30,246 nucleotides of DNA. It comes from Octopus sinensis (taxonomy: Eukaryota). The stretch lies in NCBI RefSeq assembly GCF_006345805.1, contig NW_021836554.1, positions 1-30,246 on the forward strand. Direction: 5' to 3'. The notes under the pieces were generated by a model. That model did no database searches and had not been told where the DNA came from. It worked only from the letters and a program-made list of their open reading frames with translations. Made by a program: the position numbers and the translations under genes. Of this stretch, positions 13,283-30,246 are shown in pieces (within the stretch, counting starts at the first letter, position 1; each line of letters begins with the position of its first letter).

Positions 13283-13466
13283 AAGGTGGCGAGCTGGCAG
13301 AATCGTCAGCGCGCTGGACAATGTTTAGCGGTATTTCAACCGTTGGTACGTTCTGCGTTCAAATTCCGCCAAGGTCGAATTTACCTTTCATCCTTTCGGG
13401 GTCGATAAACCAAGTGCGACTTAATCGCTTCCCCAAATTTGAGGTACTGTGCTTCCAGTAGAAAGA
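13283..13466 (+). mobile_element. SINE family B, short variant (internal deletion); (TTA)n tail to 13568
   Basis: AAGGTGGCGAGCTGGCAGAATCG head; GCGTTCAAATTCC; CTTTCATCCTTTCGGGGTCGATAAA. Confidence 0.85.
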
Positions 13467-13470
13467 ATTA

Positions 13471-13501
<31 letters not shown>

Positions 13502-13568
13502 TATAATTATAATTATTATTATTATTATCATTATTATTATTATTATCATTATTATTATTATTATTATT

Positions 13569-14158
13569 GAGTGAGAGAGCAGTTCATGCCATCAAAGTGA
13601 CACTGGGGTAAAATATCCGAAGCCCAGTATACCCATCATGACTACCCGTCTGATAAGGGTATACCAGGCACATGCATCACAACTATATGTGCGCGACATG
13701 GTGATCTCATATCAAGGTAAACAGCGCATGACCTTGCAGGTGGGGCCCAGTTAGAATTTTCTTCAGGTCGAGTAGCCCATCCCGCTCAAAAGGTCCCTGA
13801 ATAAGGGTTGTTAGCCCATCCCGCTCAAAAGGTCCCTGAATAAGGGTTGTTTAAGGATGTTGAAAGAACCACCCATGTTTCCAGAGGTGAATTATTCAAA
13901 CCCCAAAGAATCCCTCTCAACACATGGCTATGATGCTCCCCCACTACTTCTGCTCGTGATCAGAGATGCACATATCGTCAGCCACTAAGGGACATGCTCA
14001 ACTGGTTAAGGTCAAACACTGACAAGCAAATGTGGTATTGAGCAGAATATTTGCTGTAGCCCATCTTTTATACCAAGACAAAACAATGTACGTGATGACA
14101 CTTCCAATCAGTTAAGATCAGAAGCTATGAGAGCCACTGCCTGGTACTGCATCAGGGC
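13569..14158 (-). mobile_element. ~590-bp non-coding retroposon flanked by (TAA)n on both sides; no tRNA head
   Basis: Minus strand runs (TAA)n|GCCCTGATGCAGTACC...CTCTCTCACTC|AATAATAAT; a second, 5'-truncated copy at 25577-25800 has the same 3' end. Confidence 0.8.
13773..13850. repeat. Exact 39-bp tandem duplication
   Basis: TAGCCCATCCCGCTCAAAAGGTCCCTGAATAAGGGTTGT occurs at 13773 and 13812. Confidence 0.95.
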
Positions 14159-14544: not shown

Positions 14545-15687
14545 TCTGTAAGATATAAAATCGTGGTTAAGTAAATAGTTACTACTACATGTCTCTACAT
14601 CCTGCATCTCTATTTATCCTTCACGAACAGATGGGTTTTAAGAGAATAACAAAATCAATACAAAGAAAATTAAAAGCGTTATCTTTCTTCTTTTTTTTTT
14701 TTTAAAGAAACTCGCTTTTATTGCTCATGAATTCTAGGAAAATCAACTTGTAAATTCGATCAAAATACGTCGTTTTTAAAGGTAAATTTCCCTCGATAAT
14801 GTTCAAACCCACATTTATGAGACGAAAAGATGAGGATATATATATTTTTTTAAAATCTTTTAGATAAAATTGTTACATTTCTGGCAGATATAAAAAGAAG
14901 TATATTTCCTCAATCCATCCTCTAAAACATTAATAGAAAACAAAAAATAATAAATAAAACGAAGTTCTTTTTTTTCTAAATCCCCATAGCTTCTCCAGCA
15001 TTTTTCTGCAATCCCCAATTCTTTATGATCATTCCTCCTAAATCACCATTCTTTTATGGATATTTCTTTAACATCCAGATACTTTTACGATCATTTCTCT
15101 AAAATCCCTTTTTTACTCCTTATTTTTTTTTTATAAACTTACCACTAAAATTATAATTCTTTTATAGGCGAATCAATAAAGTTACCATTCTTTTATGATT
15201 CTTTGTTGAAACTTAGTATTCTTTAATGAAAACTTTTGAATCAGTGTTTTATTTTTTAATGGAAATAATGTTGCTTCCACATAACAATTAACTGAACGAA
15301 ATACAATGGAAAGGAGTGCTGTATTATTGCAATAGTTTAATGATTGGACAAGAAACAAGAACGGTCACGATTGCAAGGTGAATATTATTGCACAGCTTTC
15401 TTTCGTAATCTTCCACTAAAATTTTCGTTCTGTTTAGGCATTCCAAGATGAGGCTTCTACGTTAGCTGCCGTGTAAATACCGCTCAGTATGTCTTCCATG
15501 TTATCTTCACGATCTGTTAAAACTAGCAGTCAAAAATCAATGTCTCATGACGACTTGACATAGTGAAAAAGCGGGGCAACGGTCTGTGGGATAACAGAAT
15601 GAAATATACGCAACAGATGAGGAAAATTAGTGTGGACGAGAGGATGTCACGAATCATACACCTGGACCGATTGTATATATATATACC

Positions 15688-15908
15688 TATTTCTTTAGGG
15701 GCTAAACACAGAGAGGACAAGCAAGGACAGACAAACAGATTAAGTCGATTATATCGACCCCAGTACGTTACTGGTACACATTTAATCGACCCCGAAAGGA
15801 TGAAAGGCAAAGTCGACTTCGGCGGAATTTGAACTCAGAACGTAGCGGCAGACGAAATACCGCTAAGCATTTCGCCTGGCGTGCTAACGATTCTGCCAAC
15901 TCACCGCC
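15688..15908 (-). mobile_element. SINE family B, long variant, full length with TSD
   Basis: Minus strand AAGGCGGTGAGTTGGCAGAATCG...GTGTTTAGCCCCTAAAGAAATA; flanks TTG(TA)6CC at 15671-15687 and TTG(TA)5CC at 15909-15923. Confidence 0.9.
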
Positions 15909-15933
15909 TTGTATATATATACCAATATAAAAG

Positions 15934-16190
15934 CTGGCACTCCGTCGGTTGCGACGACAAGGGCTCCACTTGATTCGATCAGCGGAACGGCTTGCTTATG
16001 AAATTAACTTGCAAGTGGCTGACACTCCACAGACACGTGTAACCGTAACGTAGTTCTCGGAGACTTAGCGTGACAGACAATGTGGCAAGGCTGGTTCTTT
16101 GAATTACAGTTGCAACTCACCTTTGGCAGCTGAATGAGAAACAGAGGAACGAGAAATAAAGCCTCTTGCTCAAGGACACAACACTCGGAA
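15934..16190 (-). mobile_element. SINE family A, lacking the tRNA head
   Basis: Body aligns with 758-1000 (CTGGCACTCCGTCGGTT...CAGACACGTGTAAC...CTTGCTCAAGGACACAAC). Confidence 0.8.
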
Positions 16191-17856: not shown

Positions 17857-17894
<38 letters not shown>

Positions 17895-17949
17895 TATATA
17901 TTCTATATATACTATATATATTTATAGATTATATATATATTTGTGTATG

Positions 17950-17993
<44 letters not shown>

Positions 17994-18012
17994 ATATATA
18001 TATTTATATATT

Positions 18013-18043
<31 letters not shown>

Positions 18044-18239
18044 ATATACACACACACATAGATATATATGTATATGTATATTTATATTTTATATATACGC
18101 ACACATGCATTTACATATACATATATGCCATATTATATATACCACACACATTTATATATATATATATATATATATATATGTAGGTATATATATGCATACG
18201 TATATATACACACTTATGTGTAAACACAAACACACACAT

Positions 18240-18272
<33 letters not shown>

Positions 18273-18430
18273 TATATGTGTGTGTATATACACTCACGTG
18301 TACACATACATACATATAAATATTATCTCTCTCCCTGTCTGTATGCATCAGCTTCTCTCCCGCTCTCTCTCCCTTTCTCTCGCTTTCTCCCTTTCCCTCT
18401 CTCTCCACCCTCTCTCTCTTTCTCTCTCTC
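17800..18430. repeat. (TA)n/(CA)n/(TACA)n/(TC)n compound array
   Basis: Directly visible. Confidence 0.9.
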
Positions 18431-21153: not shown

Positions 21154-21358
21154 TTCAACTTTTGGCACAAATCCAGCAATTTCGCTAAGACGATTACATT
21201 GACCCCTGTGTTCTAACTGGTATTTATTTGATAGACCCCACGAAAGGATGAAAGACAAAGTCAACCTCGGCGTAATTTGAACTCAGAATGCGAAGACGGA
21301 CAAAATGCCGTTGGGCCTTTTGTCCGGCATGTTAACGGTTCTGCCAGCTCTTCGCCTT
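21154..21358 (-). mobile_element. SINE family B, short variant (diverged)
   Basis: Reverse complement of head (GAGCTGGCAGAACCGTTAAC), B-box (CTGAGTTCAAATT) and tail (TGTGCCAAAAGTTGAA). Confidence 0.8.
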
Positions 21359-21380
21359 CGAATAAAAGCAGAAAATATTC

Positions 21381-21575
21381 TTCCTTCTCTAGGCACAAGG
21401 TCTGAAATTTCTGGGGAGAGGACACTTCGATTACATCGACCCCCAGTGTTTCACTGGTACTTGTTTTATTGACTCCGAAAGGATGAAAGACAATGTCGAT
21501 CTCGGCGGAATTTGAACTCAGAACGCGCTGAGCATTTTGCCCGGCATGCTAACGATTTCGCTAGCTTATCGCCTT
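21381..21575 (-). mobile_element. SINE family B, short variant with diverged TSD
   Basis: Same motifs; flanked by AATAAAAGCAG..ATATT at 21361 and 21579. Confidence 0.8.
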
Positions 21576-21619
21576 AATAATAAAAGCAGTGGATATTGCC
21601 ACCCCTGCTTTAAGGAAGA

Positions 21620-22500: not shown

Positions 22501-22511
22501 ATGTTAATGGC

Positions 22512-22731
22512 TCTGACGACCAGCTGGCAGAATCGTGAAGGACACTGGACACGAAATATTCAGCAACATATTTCGCTCGTTGCTACGTTCACAGTTCAAA
22601 ATCCGCCGAGGTCAGTTATGCTTTTCGTACTTTCGGGGTCGATAAATTAAGTACCAGTGAATCCCTGGGGTCGATATAATCGACTATTACCCTCCACCCA
22701 AATTTGAGGCCTTGTGCCTCCAGTAGAAACG

Positions 22732-22732
<1 letters not shown>
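22512..22732 (+). mobile_element. SINE family B, short variant; (TTA)n tail to 22820
   Basis: AGCTGGCAGAATCG head; CAGTTCAAAATCCGCCGAGG; GGCCTTGTGCCTCCAGTAGAAACGATTATT tail. Confidence 0.85.
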
Positions 22733-22820
<88 letters not shown>

Positions 22821-23264
22821 GAGGCAGCAAACTGGCAAAGATGTGAGCAAGCTAGACGAAATGCTTAGCGGTATTTCACCCGGCAGAATCGTTAGCACGC
22901 CGGACGAAATGCTTAGCGGTATTTCGTCTGCTGTTACGTTCTGAGTTCAAATTCCGCCGAGGTCGACTTTGCCTTTCATTCTTTCGGGGTCGATAAATTG
23001 AGTACCAGTTACGCACTGGGGTCGATATAATCGACTTAATCCGTCTGTCTGTCTTTGTTTGTCCCCTCTGTGTTTAGCCCCTTGTGGGTAGTAAAGAAAT
23101 AGGTACTTCACCCGTCGCTACGTTCTCTGTTCAAATTCCACCAGGGTCGACTTTGCCTTTCTTCCTTTCGGTGTCGATTAAATAAATACCAGTCGCGCAC
23201 TGGGAGGGGGGTCGATGTCATACCCTCCCCCAAAATTGCTTCCGTTGAGGCAAAATTTGAATCC
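22821..23264 (+). mobile_element. Older SINE B short variant interrupted by a nested long variant
   Basis: Host head at 22821-22881 and host remainder at 23102-23264 are more diverged than the insert; (TTA)n tail follows. Confidence 0.85.
22882..23101 (+). mobile_element. SINE B long variant nested in SINE B
   Basis: 12-bp TSD GGTATTTCACCC (22870-81) / GGTACTTCACCC (23102-13); ends GTAGTAAAGAAATA. Confidence 0.88.
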
Positions 23265-23311
23265 ATTATTATTATTATTACTATTATTATTATTACTATT
23301 ATTATTATTAC

Positions 23312-23378
<67 letters not shown>
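23265..23378. repeat. (TTA)n microsatellite (SINE tail)
   Basis: Directly visible. Confidence 0.95.
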
Positions 23379-23380
<2 letters not shown>

Positions 23381-23975: not shown

Positions 23976-24084
23976 TGATGATGATGGTGATGATCATGAT
24001 GATGATGATGATGATAATAATAATAATAATAAAATGATGATGATGATGATAATAACAATAATAATAATATTAATATTAATAATA
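23870..24084. repeat. (TAA)n/(TGA)n microsatellite
   Basis: Directly visible; 5' flank of the Dong insertion. Confidence 0.95.
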
Positions 24085-25333
24085 GAGGTCGAGCAATCCT
24101 GAAGTCTGAGCTGAATGCATATAATAAGGTGTTAGCCATAAATTCCTTAGCAGTCCCAGTTGTTCTTCATAGTTCCAATGTGATTTACTGGAATACCAGT
24201 GATATAATGAAAATTGGCAGAAAAATCTGCAGTCTACTGACTTGTAATAAGATGCACCATCCAAAGGCAGAGGTGGATCGTCTTTACCTTCCCAGAGCTA
24301 AGGGAGGTCGAGGTTTGATCCAGCTTGAACTTACATATAAAACTACCACAATCGGACTGGCCAAATACCTTGAAGCAACCAACGATTGGATGCTAAAACT
24401 TGTTGAAAAACATAAAAGACCGAAAAAACTTCACTCTATTCTGAAAGAGAGCAATAAATTCGCTACTGACCTCTTAGATTGATCAGGTTGAAGGAAATGC
24501 GCCAACTGCTGCAAAGAAATTAAAATTAATTGCAAAGACAAAAGCACATGAAAAATTAGCTAGCAGACGGGAACAGAAACCTCTGCATGGCAAGTATGTG
24601 GCCTGTAGCAAACAAGCTGATATCGACCAGAAACACACGCACCAATGGTTACGAAGCTCAGGGCTAAAAGCAGAGAGTGAAGGTTTCATATTAACTGCTC
24701 AAGACCAAAGCTTATTAACCCGGAACTACCAAGCCAATGTGATAAAAAATGGAGCTGACCCAAAATGCCGATTCTGTAACGATGAGATTGAAACAATAGA
24801 CCACCTAACCTCAGGGTGTAGAGTCTTAGCACATGTAGAATATAAAGCAAGACATGACAGAGTCGGCCAGTATTTACACTGGACAATATGTCAGCATTAT
24901 AAAATCAAAGCCACTGACAAATGGTATAAACACCATCCTGAAGCTGTGACTGAGGGAGAAAATGTGTCGATTCTATGGGACTTCCCCGTGCAGACCGACA
25001 GAACTATAAAAGCTAATAAAACGGATATTATTATAAAAGATCACACAAAAAGGTTGTGTTTATTAATTGACATGAGTATCCCTTGCGATCACAATATAGC
25101 GGCGAAAGAATTTGACAAGATCAGTAAATATAAAGACTTACTAATAGAAACTGAAAAAAATGTGGCATCTCAAGGCGACTACAGTACCAGTGATTGTAGG
25201 ATCTCTAGGAATGATAAAAAAAGATACTGAAACCTATTTGAAAATGATACCAGGCTTGCCATCCCTTCAGGAAGTGCAAAAAATCGTGTTAACTGGAACG
25301 GCTCATGTACTGAGAAGAGCATTATCGCTGTGA
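24085..25333 (+). pseudogene. Dong/R4 ORF C-terminal part: post-RT region, CCHC knuckle, restriction-like endonuclease
   Basis: NKVLAINSLAVPVV; RLYLPRAKGGRGL; CRFCNDEIETIDHLTSGC; RHDRV; ANKTDIIIKD; LIDMSIP; KYKDL; VPVIVGSLG; GTAHVLRRALSL*. Frameshifts near 24478 and 25165. Confidence 0.93.
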
Positions 25334-25576: not shown

Positions 25577-25800
25577 CTTTTGAGCGGGATGAGCTGCTCG
25601 ACCAGAAGAAAACTCTAACTGGGCCCCACCTGCAAGGTCATGCGCTGTTTATCTTGATATGAGATCACCATGTCGCGCACATATAGTTGTTATGCATGTG
25701 CTTGGTGTGCCCTTATCAGACGGGTAGTCATGATAGGTATACTGGGCTTCGTATATTTTACCCCAGTGTCACTTTGATGGCATGCACTGCTCTCTCACTC
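25577..25800 (+). mobile_element. 5'-truncated copy of the ~590-bp (TAA)n retroposon
   Basis: Reverse complement of 13569-~13790; ends CTCTCTCACTC followed by AATAATAATAAT. Confidence 0.85.
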
Positions 25801-25888
25801 AATAATAATAATAACAATAATAATAACAATGTTAATAATAATAATAATGAAAACAAGAATAATGGTGATGATGATGAAGATGATTTCA

Positions 25889-26510: not shown

Positions 26511-26771
26511 AAGGCGGCGAGCTGTCAGAAACGTTAACACGCCGGGCGAAATGCGTAGCGGTATTTCGTCTGCCGCTACGTTCTGAGTTCAAATTCCGCC
26601 GAGGTCGACTTTGCCTTTCATCCTTTCGGGGTCGATAAATTAAGTACCAGTTACGCACTGGGGTCGATATAATCAACTTAATCCGTTTGTCTGTCCTTGT
26701 TTGTCCTCTGTGTTTAGCCCGTTGTGGGTAGTAAAGAAATAGGTATTTCGTCTGCCGTTACGTTCTGAGTT
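26511..26771 (+). mobile_element. SINE family B long variant with a 30-bp re-entry of its own internal sequence
   Basis: GGTATTTCGTCTGCCG(C/T)TACGTTCTGAGTT at 26560-26589 and 26742-26771 (period 182). Confidence 0.9.
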
Positions 26772-27198
26772 CTGAGTTATGAAGGCCTTGATGAGAATAA
26801 TAATAATACCTTTAGCTTTTAGAATGATTATCTTCAAAAGTCTAAACGATATGTGACGATTATTAACTAAGAACTAGTTGTTCAGCCAACACCAAGAAGA
26901 AAAAAAAATAGTTTAGCTCCGAAAATAAGAATCGAAACCGTAACGACAATACTACTCAGAAATTCATTACCACAGCATTATATTGAACGCACAGATGTAT
27001 TAGCTGTGAAGATATTCCCCATTAAAATATTCACAAAACCATTGAGACTTTGAGCCAAACGAAATCAACTGAATGAATGAGTAATAATATTTATAGAGCG
27101 GTACAACGGCTTCATATGTGACAGGGTGAATAGCTGTGGTGTATATGGACACGGTAGATTCGATTAGAAGGCGCATCAAAGATTCGGGGGTTTGGTTT

Positions 27199-29361: not shown

Positions 29362-30246
29362 GAGGGACGTTCAATAAGTAATGCCTCTGACCCACTTGCA
29401 GTTGTTGGATGTAGCTGAAATTGCATGTGCAATCATTTATATCCCTATAGAGTAAGTGGCAAATTACAGCTCTGAATTAATTGTGCTTTCTGATTTACAG
29501 GTGTTTGAACCGAGTCAGGTGTGAAATGGAGCCTGTTGAGTGCCGAGCAGGCAGTGATCCGGTTTTTGTATTTGAAAGGACGCACACCACGGGAGACTTT
29601 TGATGAAATGAAAGTAACTTATGGTGATGATGCCCCATCATATGATCTTGTAAAACGCTGGCATCGTGAATTCAAACATGGTCGGAACTCTGTGGAAACA
29701 GCTCCCAGATCTGGCGCCCCCTTCTGCCATTGATGAGGCATCTGTCCGTCAAGTTGAGGCTGTGCCATTTTGGAAGATCGACGCATAATTATTCGCCAAA
29801 TAGCCCATGAGGTCAAGATTAGTACCGGGTCTGGGGAAACTATCATTCATGACCATTTGCATATGCAAAAGGTGTCTGCCAGATGGATTCCCAGGTTGCT
29901 CACGCCTTTCCAGAAGCAAGAACGCGTCGAGTGCTCGAGGGTGAATTTGGAGATGTGCCAATAAGATGAGTCAAAATTTTTCAAAAGACTGATTACACAG
30001 GATGAAACCTGGGTCCATCATGATGATCAAGAGACCAAAGCCCAGTCAATGCAGTGGAAGCACCGTGACTCACCCCCTCCAAAGAAGGCAAGGGTGCAGC
30101 CCTCTACTGGCAAGGTCATGCTCACAGTCTTCTGGGACCAGGACGGAGTAGTGATGACAGATTTCCTGGCAAAGGGTACCACAATTGCAGGGCCTATTAT
30201 GCTTCACTTTTGAGGAAATTAAGAGAAGTTATCAAATCAAGAGGCG
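29361..30246 (+). mobile_element. Mariner (irritans/Hsmar2-like), 5' part, cut by the window end
   Basis: TA|CGAGGGACGTTCAATAAGTAATGC left end inside (TA)n, followed by a transposase pseudogene. Confidence 0.92.
29526..30246 (+). pseudogene. Mariner transposase pseudogene (partial)
   Basis: MEPVECR..AVIRFLYLKG...VKRWHREFKHG...PRSG; KVSARWIPRLLT; RLITQDETWVHH; KVMLTVFWD. Several frameshifts and a TAA stop at 29962. Confidence 0.93.

What the first reader, a model, noticed from the sequence alone, without database searches (positions are those of the whole stretch)
22821..23264. Self-nesting SINE: long variant targets the GGTATTTC motif inside its own family
Seen: a younger long-variant copy splits an older SINE B exactly at GGTATTTC between the A and B boxes, with a 12-bp TSD. 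All three long-variant copies in the window (15688, 22882, 26511) end GAAATA|GGTA(T/C). The short variant instead ends in (TTA)n. Inference: one SINE head and core has two alternative 3' tails using different LINE partners. The long tail confers GGTAT site preference (endonuclease specificity or 3' microhomology priming), which disrupts competing copies' promoters and could build tandem arrays.
Basis: partly seen in the sequence, partly recalled or inferred. Interest (0 to 1): 0.72.

Follow-up and report, generated by a model that had tools for sequence, protein, structure and literature searches.

The report
Young SINE nested in older SINE
A younger copy of a short octopus-type retroposon (SINE) has inserted into an older relative at a GGTAT motif that this subfamily favours wherever it lands; this looks like an ordinary short-motif target preference, not proven self-homing.

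Summary
A 220-bp, 5'-truncated long-tail SINE (22882-23101) splits an older, ~77%-identical short-tail SINE (22821-23264). It is flanked by a 12-bp duplication, GGTATTTCACCC/GGTACTTCACCC. All three long-tail copies in the window end GAAATA followed by GGTA. In two of them the 5' duplicate also starts GGTAT, so the motif belongs to the target and is not merely encoded by the element. The third copy has no duplication and is followed by 31 bp of SINE sequence starting at the same GGTATTTC.

Three more junctions from Octopus vulgaris transcripts read GGTATTTA, GGTATTTT and TATGTG. The preference is therefore strong (5 of 6) but not absolute, and it also applies to non-SINE sites.

SINE heads hold 18-38% of GGTAT(A/T)T or GGTATTT sites in this window, so two head hits in three (two in five GGTA-type junctions overall) need no self-recognition. 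The two tails are homologous: same CUUGU loop, with a compensatory stem change. This points to related LINE partners, not unrelated ones. No SINE-period arrays exist here.

The best reading is target-primed insertion with a short-motif preference. Whether the endonuclease or primer-template pairing sets that preference is unresolved. The sample is tiny and the host genome was out of reach.

The parts
22505..22820 (+). Upstream short-tail SINE copy (about 22505-22731) with its (ATT)n tail (22732-22820). The outer SINE starts directly at the end of this tail.
22821..22869 (+). Outer (older) short-tail SINE: 5' head, including the A-box-like region, up to the insertion point.
22870..22881 (+). 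5' copy of the target-site duplication, GGTATTTCACCC. This is outer SINE sequence.
22882..23101 (+). Inner (younger) long-tail SINE, 220 bp. It is 5'-truncated by 13 nt and ends GTAGTAAAGAAATA. Its tail hairpin GCCC-CUUGU-GGGU is at 23077-23089.
23102..23113 (+). 3' copy of the target-site duplication, GGTACTTCACCC (one T>C difference).
23114..23264 (+). Outer SINE, remainder: B-box-like region, core and short tail.
23265..23379 (+). (ATT)n tail of the outer SINE.
15688..15910 (-). Long-tail copy a, with a full-length 5' end. A 10-nt deletion (TGTGGGTAGT) has removed the 3' half of the tail hairpin.
15911..15923 (-). 5' duplicate of copy a: GGTATATATATAC.
15673..15687 (-). 3' duplicate of copy a: GGTATATATATATAC, one extra AT unit.
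26511..26741 (+). Long-tail copy c, full length, with no recognisable target-site duplication.
26742..26772 (+). 31-bp SINE fragment GGTATTTCGTCTGCCGTTACGTTCTGAGTTC, corresponding to SINE positions 39-69. It matches the young subfamily at 30/31 and abuts the 3' end of copy c. No SINE head lies upstream of copy c.

Best explanation
This is an ordinary nested retroposition. A younger long-tail subfamily of a tRNA-derived, octopus-type SINE was copied by target-primed reverse transcription into an older short-tail member of the same superfamily.

Shown:
- The insert is 5'-truncated, flanked by a 12-bp duplication, and younger than its host.
- This subfamily's insertions start preferentially at nicks immediately 5' of top-strand GGTAT(T/A)T. 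The priming bottom strand therefore ends ...A(A/T)ATACC-3', and the duplications begin with the motif.

Inferred:
- The preference is set at first-strand cleavage or priming by the partner LINE. My split is about 45% nicking specificity of its endonuclease, about 40% base pairing between the nicked end and a few nucleotides following GAAAUA on the template RNA, and the rest something else.
- The family's head carries GGTATTTC in the 3' strand of its anticodon-arm-like hairpin, and SINEs are very abundant. Heads therefore supply a large share of available sites, and same-orientation nesting at position 39 recurs as a by-product. It is not recognition of the SINE as such.
- The short-tail relatives behave analogously with (ATT)n: their tails end in it and new copies abut it.
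For: - Nesting, duplication and truncation.
- Age order: long copies 91.5-94% identical to each other versus 77-79% to the host.
- Copy a has a 13/15-bp duplication beginning GGTAT at a non-SINE (AT)n site.
- All three window junctions are GAAATA|GGTA, against a background of 0.0031.
- O. vulgaris transcripts that map at 100% identity to genome scaffolds give GGTAGTAAAGAAATA|GGTATTTATAGAC (comp3761) and TAATAAAGAAATA|GGTATTTTGCACG. Both are non-SINE sites.
- SINE heads make up 18% of GGTAT(A/T)T sites and 38% of GGTATTT sites in the window, which is enough to explain 2 head hits in 3.
- The head hairpin places GGTATTTC at the loop/stem boundary.
- Short copies abut (ATT)n tracts in the window and in an O. 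vulgaris transcript.
- Sequence-specific SINEs that pile up in another repeat are an established kind (SINEU-3, PMC4494074). Site-specific LINE clades (Dong-R4, L1-Tx1, R2, Hero) are recently active in O. vulgaris (PMC13282606).
Against: - There are only six junctions, and one of them was found with a search word that already contained GGTA.
- One unbiased external junction (comp3425) reads GAAATA|TATGTG with no GG.
- Copy c has no duplication, and its 31-bp SINE fragment is not explained by a simple insertion.
- No partner LINE with this tail was found, so neither endonuclease specificity nor template pairing is tested.
- The window was flagged because it is SINE-rich, so the site-share estimate is local and post hoc.
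Confidence: 0.55

Rival explanations
1. Primer-template pairing sets the preference, not endonuclease specificity. The template RNA carries a few nucleotides after GAAAUA (GGUAU, perhaps GGUAUUU), read through from the source copy's own flank or encoded by the partner LINE. Only nicked targets ending ...ATACC-3' anneal and prime. Each new copy then sits again in front of GGTAT, so the preference is inherited through the flank.
For: - The homologous short tail carries (ATT)n at the corresponding position and sits next to (ATT)n tracts, as in LINE clades whose 3' repeats pair with the target.
- Copy c shows a copy whose sequence continues past GAAATA with GGTATTTCG... for 31 nt, as expected for read-through from a source nested in a young SINE head.
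- The two sites whose upstream context is known share nothing 5' of the nick: GCTTAGC versus TTATATT.
- A correlation between the first base of the duplication and 3' microsatellite-like ends is documented for RTE-related elements (PMC6007223).
Against: - The comp3425 junction GAAATA|TATGTG lacks GG. If GGUAU were templated and TAT had primed, GG should have been copied.
- The full 5-7-nt identity in 5 of 6 junctions is more uniform than the usual variable microhomology.
- No source copy or LINE tail with the extension was seen.
Confidence: 0.3
2. True self-homing. The machinery recognises the SINE head itself, either through a longer sequence around GCTTAGC|GGTATTTC or through Pol III factors bound to the A and B boxes. 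It preferentially disrupts rival copies.
For: Two of three window copies are joined to SINE position 39, in independent contexts: the diverged host CACCC and the young-type GTCTGCC.
Against: - Copy a and both external GGTATTT junctions are at non-SINE sites.
- The motif share of SINE heads alone predicts 18-38% head hits, giving P of about 0.09 for 2/3 and about 0.23 for 2/5.
- Four other intact GCGGTATTTC heads in the window are unoccupied.
- There is no evidence of arrays.
Confidence: 0.1
3. GGTA(T) is simply the encoded 3' end of the element and there is no target preference. The matches in the 5' duplicates are coincidence.
For: All window copies show the same four bases after GAAATA.
Against: Both 5' duplicates begin GGTAT upstream of the element. 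The chance of that is about 0.0011 each. One external copy lacks GGTA entirely.
Confidence: 0.03
4. The structure is not an insertion. It is a product of unequal recombination, gene conversion or partial duplication between neighbouring SINE copies.
For: SINE copies are dense here, and copy c carries a partial second unit without a duplication.
Against: - At 22870-23113 there is a clean 12-bp duplication of host-specific sequence (CACCC).
- The insert is 5'-truncated, ends precisely at the family's 3' terminus, and differs from its host by about 22%.
Confidence: 0.02

Closest known systems
SINEU-3 of crocodilians, mobilised by target-specific Tx1-clade LINEs (Kojima 2015, PMC4494074)
   Same: A SINE whose copies land at one position of another interspersed repeat. 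Sequential insertions give tandem copies that sandwich a duplication.
   Different: For SINEU-3, 90% of copies sit in one DNA transposon with a 16-bp fixed duplication. Here only a 5-7-nt motif is shared, 2 of 6 junctions are in a repeat, that repeat is the SINE's own superfamily, and no partner LINE is known.
L1/Alu TT|AAAA nicking preference, with Alu insertions into A-rich tails of older Alus (textbook knowledge, not tested here)
   Same: A short-motif preference of the LINE machinery, together with that motif's presence in an abundant SINE, produces recurrent SINE-in-SINE nesting as a by-product.
   Different: The motif here is GGTAT(T/A)T. It lies in the tRNA-like head between the promoter boxes, not in the tail. 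The element has no poly(A).
Microsatellite-directed LINEs such as Dong/R4 at (TAA)n, and LINEs or SINEs whose 3' repeats pair with the target (CR1/L2 type); RTE insertion signature (PMC6007223)
   Same: The short-tail relatives end in (ATT)n and abut (ATT)n tracts. The long tail is homologous to the short one. In both, the duplication begins with the bases that follow the conserved tail.
   Different: The long variant has no terminal repeat. The clade of its partner is unknown. Dong-R4, CR1, RTE and L1-Tx1 are all active in O. vulgaris.
Octopus tRNA-derived SINEs OR1, OR2 and OK (Ohshima & Okada 1994; OR2 is filed as SINE/tRNA-Core)
   Same: This is a tRNA-like head plus core plus LINE-like tail in an octopus-type genome. 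OR2 is the SINE label RepeatMasker gives in O. vulgaris transcripts.
   Different: I could not obtain the OR1, OR2 or OK consensus, so identity with any of them is untested.

Membership tests
SINE (Pol III-transcribed, tRNA-derived retroposon) | Internal A and B boxes in a tRNA-like head | tested here: inconclusive
   By eye, TGGCAGAATCG matches the A-box consensus at 9/11 and GAGTTCAAATTCC is B-box-like, about 40 nt apart. The head folds into a long hairpin. ARAGORN finds no tRNA, and Rfam listed no tRNA among its best 150 of 172 matches.
SINE (Pol III-transcribed, tRNA-derived retroposon) | Short (<600 bp), non-coding, many dispersed copies with distinct flanks | tested here: met
   About ten copies of 200-230 bp in 30 kb, each with different flanks. 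The same tail is present in O. vulgaris transcripts.
LINE-dependent (target-primed) retroposition | Variable-length target-site duplications and 5' truncation | tested here: met
   Duplications of 12 bp and 13/15 bp in two of three long copies. Copy b is truncated by 13 nt. Copy c has no duplication.
LINE-dependent (target-primed) retroposition | 3' tail shared with a partner LINE | not testable with these tools
   The tail occurs only in SINE copies in the window. The 19-mer gave only chance matches in the metagenome, prokaryote genome and viral collections. The host genome is absent from the protein collection.
Sequence-specific (site-specific) SINE/LINE | The large majority of copies lie at one defined target sequence, with a duplication of fixed sequence | tested here: inconclusive
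   Five of six junctions share GGTA, and four or five share GGTAT(T). The duplications differ after 5-7 nt, and one junction lacks the motif. Six junctions are too few.
   Heads make up 5 of about 27 GGTAT(A/T)T sites and 5 of 13 GGTATTT sites. Observed head hits are 2/3 in the window and 2/5 of all GGTA-type junctions, so there is no significant excess.
   TRF finds only microsatellites and periods up to 47 bp.
CORE-SINE / OR2 | Conserved CORE domain after the tRNA-like head | tested here: inconclusive
OR2 is listed as an octopus CORE-SINE and is annotated in O. vulgaris transcripts, but not on the contigs examined.

The most novel reading that the evidence does not exclude
Target choice is inherited through the flank rather than encoded by an enzyme. 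Pol III transcripts of long-tail copies run a few bases into the downstream GGTATTT(T), where a T-run may even serve as terminator. That GGUAUUU end pairs with a nicked GGTATTT site, so every daughter again sits in front of the motif. Copies nested in SINE heads (GGTATTTC, only three T) read through further and give extended products such as copy c. The SINE would then carry a self-propagating 'address' that happens to match its own head.
Probability: 0.12. Interest if true: 0.7.

Novelty: new member of a known kind. Interest (0 to 1): 0.35.

Why it matters
If the GGTAT(T/A)T preference holds genome-wide, it has three uses:
- It gives a handle on the unidentified LINE that drives one of the younger SINE waves in octopus genomes, where SINEs make up about 12% of the DNA.
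- It explains recurrent same-orientation SINE-in-SINE composites, which repeat annotators may mis-call as dimeric subfamilies. This happened with SINEU-3B.
- It offers a simple natural case for separating endonuclease specificity from primer-template pairing in target choice.

It does not, on present evidence, show a SINE that homes to and silences its own relatives.

Tried and rejected
1. More copies from public DNA collections. The 19-mer tail TGTGGGTAGTAAAGAAATA was scanned against metagenome, prokaryote genome and viral contigs. All 12 loci match only the 19-20-mer, so they are chance hits.
2. Octopus DNA through proteins. An antisense SINE ORF found nothing. The LINE ORF at 24598-25230 found only 65-70% relatives in cnidarian, crustacean and echinoderm records. 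The contig of the best hit carries no copy of this SINE. The host genome is therefore not in those collections.
3. Literature search by sequence strings found nothing in main texts. The supplement of PMC9115989 holds the first 400 kb of the O. vulgaris transcriptome and gave three junctions. The supplement of PMC13282606 held none. PMC4795812 is not held.
4. I asked whether the flank after copy c's 31-bp fragment is a degraded short tail, which would indicate a nested, internally deleted host. Local alignments were no better than shuffles, so this was rejected.
5. I looked for a duplication for copy c. No shared word longer than 6 nt exists between 60 bp upstream and 150 bp downstream.
6. The Rfam scan gave only sub-threshold microRNA-family hits at its top, on TA/TATG/AC-type microsatellites. 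These are artefacts.
7. The CORE-domain test with a remembered MIR consensus was not significant.
8. The site at 15481(-) GGTATTTAC was checked as a possible further SINE head. It is not one.

Full report
**What the window is.** The 30-kb window is AT-rich, microsatellite-laden eukaryotic DNA with no tRNA genes. It holds about ten copies of one tRNA-derived SINE superfamily, two mariner-like transposase remnants and a LINE 3' fragment. The exact 21-mer of the long SINE tail, and a short-tail copy of the same family, occur in Octopus vulgaris transcripts (PMC9115989, Additional file 2). The source is therefore an octopus or a close relative. That is an inference, not a determination.

**The observation.** An older short-tail SINE is split by a younger long-tail copy at 22882-23101.
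- The insert begins at GGCAGAATCG. It lacks the first 13 nt of the full-length element (AAGGCGGCGAGCT, seen in copies a and c) and ends at the family terminus GTAGTAAAGAAATA.
- It is bracketed by GGTATTTCACCC (22870-22881) and GGTACTTCACCC (23102-23113).
- The duplicated bases CACCC are specific to the host element; the young subfamily has GTCTGCC there. The duplication is therefore host DNA.
- With the insert and one duplicate removed, the host aligns without a gap to its paralogues.
- Long copies are 91.5-94% identical to each other but only 77-79% identical to the host. Short copies average 77% among themselves. A young element therefore sits in an old one.

**The other long copies.**
- Copy a (15688-15910, minus strand) is full length and flanked by GGTATATATATAC / GGTATATATATATAC at a non-SINE (AT)n site.
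- Copy c (26511-26741) is full length. It is followed by 31 bp, GGTATTTCGTCTGCCGTTACGTTCTGAGTTC, which is SINE position 39-69 and a 30/31 match to the young subfamily.
- No SINE head lies upstream of copy c, and no duplication is detectable. The sequence after the fragment is not a recognisable SINE tail.
- AAATAGGTA occurs three times in the window, only at these three ends.
- Background frequencies are 0.0031 for GGTA and 0.0011 for GGTAT per position and strand. The shared junction is therefore not chance.
- Both available 5' duplicates start with GGTAT, so the motif is part of the target.

**Independent junctions.** No tool reached the host genome. The held part of the O. vulgaris transcriptome supplement gave three junctions on contigs that end in the repeat.
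- comp3761 starts GGTAGTAAAGAAATA|GGTATTTATAGAC.
- The contig before comp3771 ends, in reverse complement, TAATAAAGAAATA|GGTATTTTGCACG. This one was found with a word that includes GGTA, so it is a biased find.
- comp3425 ends, in reverse complement, CTTGTGGGTAGTAAAGAAATA|TATGTGCAC.
- comp3761 and comp3425 map at 100% identity to genome scaffolds.
- Altogether 5 of 6 junctions (4 of 5 unbiased) begin GGTA. Four or five begin GGTATTT if the T>C change in copy b is counted as secondary. One has no GG.
- The two external GGTATTT sites are not SINE sequence.

**Is it self-targeting?** The window has 29 GGTAT(A/T)T sites. After removing those created by the insertions, about 27 remain, and 5 of them are SINE heads (18%). 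For GGTATTT, 5 of 13 are heads (38%). Two head hits in three has P of about 0.09 at 18%. Two in five GGTA-type junctions has P of about 0.23. Four further intact GCGGTATTTC heads in the window are unoccupied. A 5-7-nt motif preference, plus that motif's presence in a very abundant head, is sufficient. Nesting at position 39 in the same orientation then follows automatically. I see no evidence that the SINE head is recognised as such.

**The tails.** Aligned, the last ~33 nt are homologous. The long tail reads TTTAGCCCCTTGTGGGTAGTAAAGAAATA. The short tail reads ATTT(C/G)AGGCCTTGTGCCT(A/C)(G/C)AGTAGAAAGA(ATT)n. Both fold into a 4-5-bp stem closing the same CUUGU pentaloop, with the stem changed on both sides: GCCC/GGGU versus GAGGC/GCCUC. 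This is the pattern expected of a LINE 3' recognition hairpin that diverged between related lineages. The long variant differs by a ~40-nt insert upstream of the hairpin and by what follows AAAGAA: ATA and then target GGTAT, instead of (ATT)n. Short-tail copies abut (ATT)n tracts. The outer SINE starts at the end of the (ATT)30 tail of the copy at 22505, and other 5' flanks end in ATTATT. An O. vulgaris transcript shows a 5'-truncated head directly after another copy's (ATT)5. The only SINE pile-ups actually seen are these tail-directed ones. TRF finds no array with a SINE-sized period.

**Mechanism.** Shown: target-primed insertion features (duplications of 12-15 bp, 5' truncation) and a junction motif. 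Inferred: the first-strand nick falls just 5' of top-strand GGTAT, so the primer ends ...ATACC-3'. Two causes fit.
1. Nicking specificity of the partner's endonuclease. This is favoured by the uniform 5-7-nt identity. It is also favoured by the comp3425 junction, where GG is absent, which implies the template ends at GAAAUA.
2. Pairing of the nicked end with a GGUAU(UU) extension on the template. This is favoured by the analogy with (ATT)n in the sister tail, by the lack of any similarity upstream of the nick in the two known sites, and by copy c, whose sequence continues 31 nt past GAAATA as if read through from a source nested in a young head.

I put these at roughly 45% and 40%. Both are standard behaviours of non-LTR elements: target-specific Tx1, R4/Dong and R2 lineages, and the RTE correlation between 3' repeats and the first base of the duplication. 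Dong-R4, CR1, RTE and L1-Tx1 are all recently active in O. vulgaris. The partner itself was not found.

**Unexplained.**
- GAAATA|GGTATTTC is a near-palindrome, because the tail end is the complement of the target's TATTTC. The primer strand (...GAAATACC-3') therefore resembles the RNA's own 3' end. I cannot say whether this matters.
- Copy c's structure fits read-through, template switching, or nesting followed by deletions. The window cannot decide among them.

**Comparison and verdict.** The closest documented case is SINEU-3, which inserts into one position of a mariner-derived repeat and forms tandem copies around the duplication. The closest analogy in logic is Alu landing in A-rich parts of older Alus because of L1's TT|AAAA preference; that comparison rests on general knowledge. 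Relative to those, this is a further example of motif-biased SINE integration. The modest twist is that the motif lies between the promoter boxes of the family's own head. The self-homing, competition and array-building reading is not supported by the evidence available. With six junctions, all quantitative statements are provisional, and a genome-wide junction census would settle them quickly.

Noticed in passing
window 13485-13792 and 25577-25884 (inverted): A second, unrelated repeat family of about 300 bp, 90% identical between the two places. It ends in an (AAT)n/(ATT)n tract, so it may be another retroposon with a (TAA)n-type tail. At 13485 it directly follows the (ATT)n tail of the SINE at 13284.
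   Followed up: partly
window 22505-23379: A three-level pile-up. A short-tail SINE with an (ATT)30 tail is followed by a second short-tail SINE that starts exactly at the end of that tail, and the long-tail copy is nested in the second one's head. Short-tail copies seem to land in (ATT)n, as Dong/R4-type elements do at (TAA)n.
   Followed up: partly
window 24033-25330 (+): A LINE ORF2 C-terminal fragment with a weak zf-RVT match and one frameshift. Its best relatives are only 65-70% identical, in cnidarian, shrimp and sea-cucumber records. Its 3' end does not resemble either SINE tail, so it is not the partner.
   Followed up: partly
window 10479-10945 (-) and 29509-30246 (+): Two degraded mariner/Tc1-like transposase remnants: frameshifted ORFs with motifs such as PPYSPDIAPFDY and ITQDETWVHH. 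There was no Pfam hit for the first at E<=0.1.
   Followed up: no
window 15688-15910 (-), tail: Copy a lacks 10 nt (TGTGGGTAGT) of the tail, which removes the 3' half of the conserved hairpin. This is either a post-insertion deletion or a variant that still transposed.
   Followed up: no
window 21186-21600 (-): Two adjacent short-tail SINE copies share the same 5' flank motif CTGCTTTTATT. The regions 21191-21379 and 21428-21597 align at 73%, which suggests an old local duplication of SINE plus flank rather than two independent insertions.
   Followed up: no
window 736-999, 8657-8863 and 15912-16182: Another dispersed repeat, 66-72% identical between copies. One copy lies immediately upstream of long-tail copy a.
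   Followed up: no
window 2793-3398, 9020-9400, 17860-18320 and others: The listed Rfam 'evalue' hits at these places (mir-297, mir-466, mir-3149 and similar) fall on TA/TATG/ATAC microsatellites, far below gathering scores. They are artefacts of low complexity. An 82-bp periodicity is visible at 2968, 3050 and 3132.
   Followed up: partly
window 13773-13851: A perfect 39-bp direct repeat in two copies (TAGCCCATCCCGCTCAAAAGGTCCCTGAATAAGGGTTGT), lying partly within the second repeat family.
   Followed up: no
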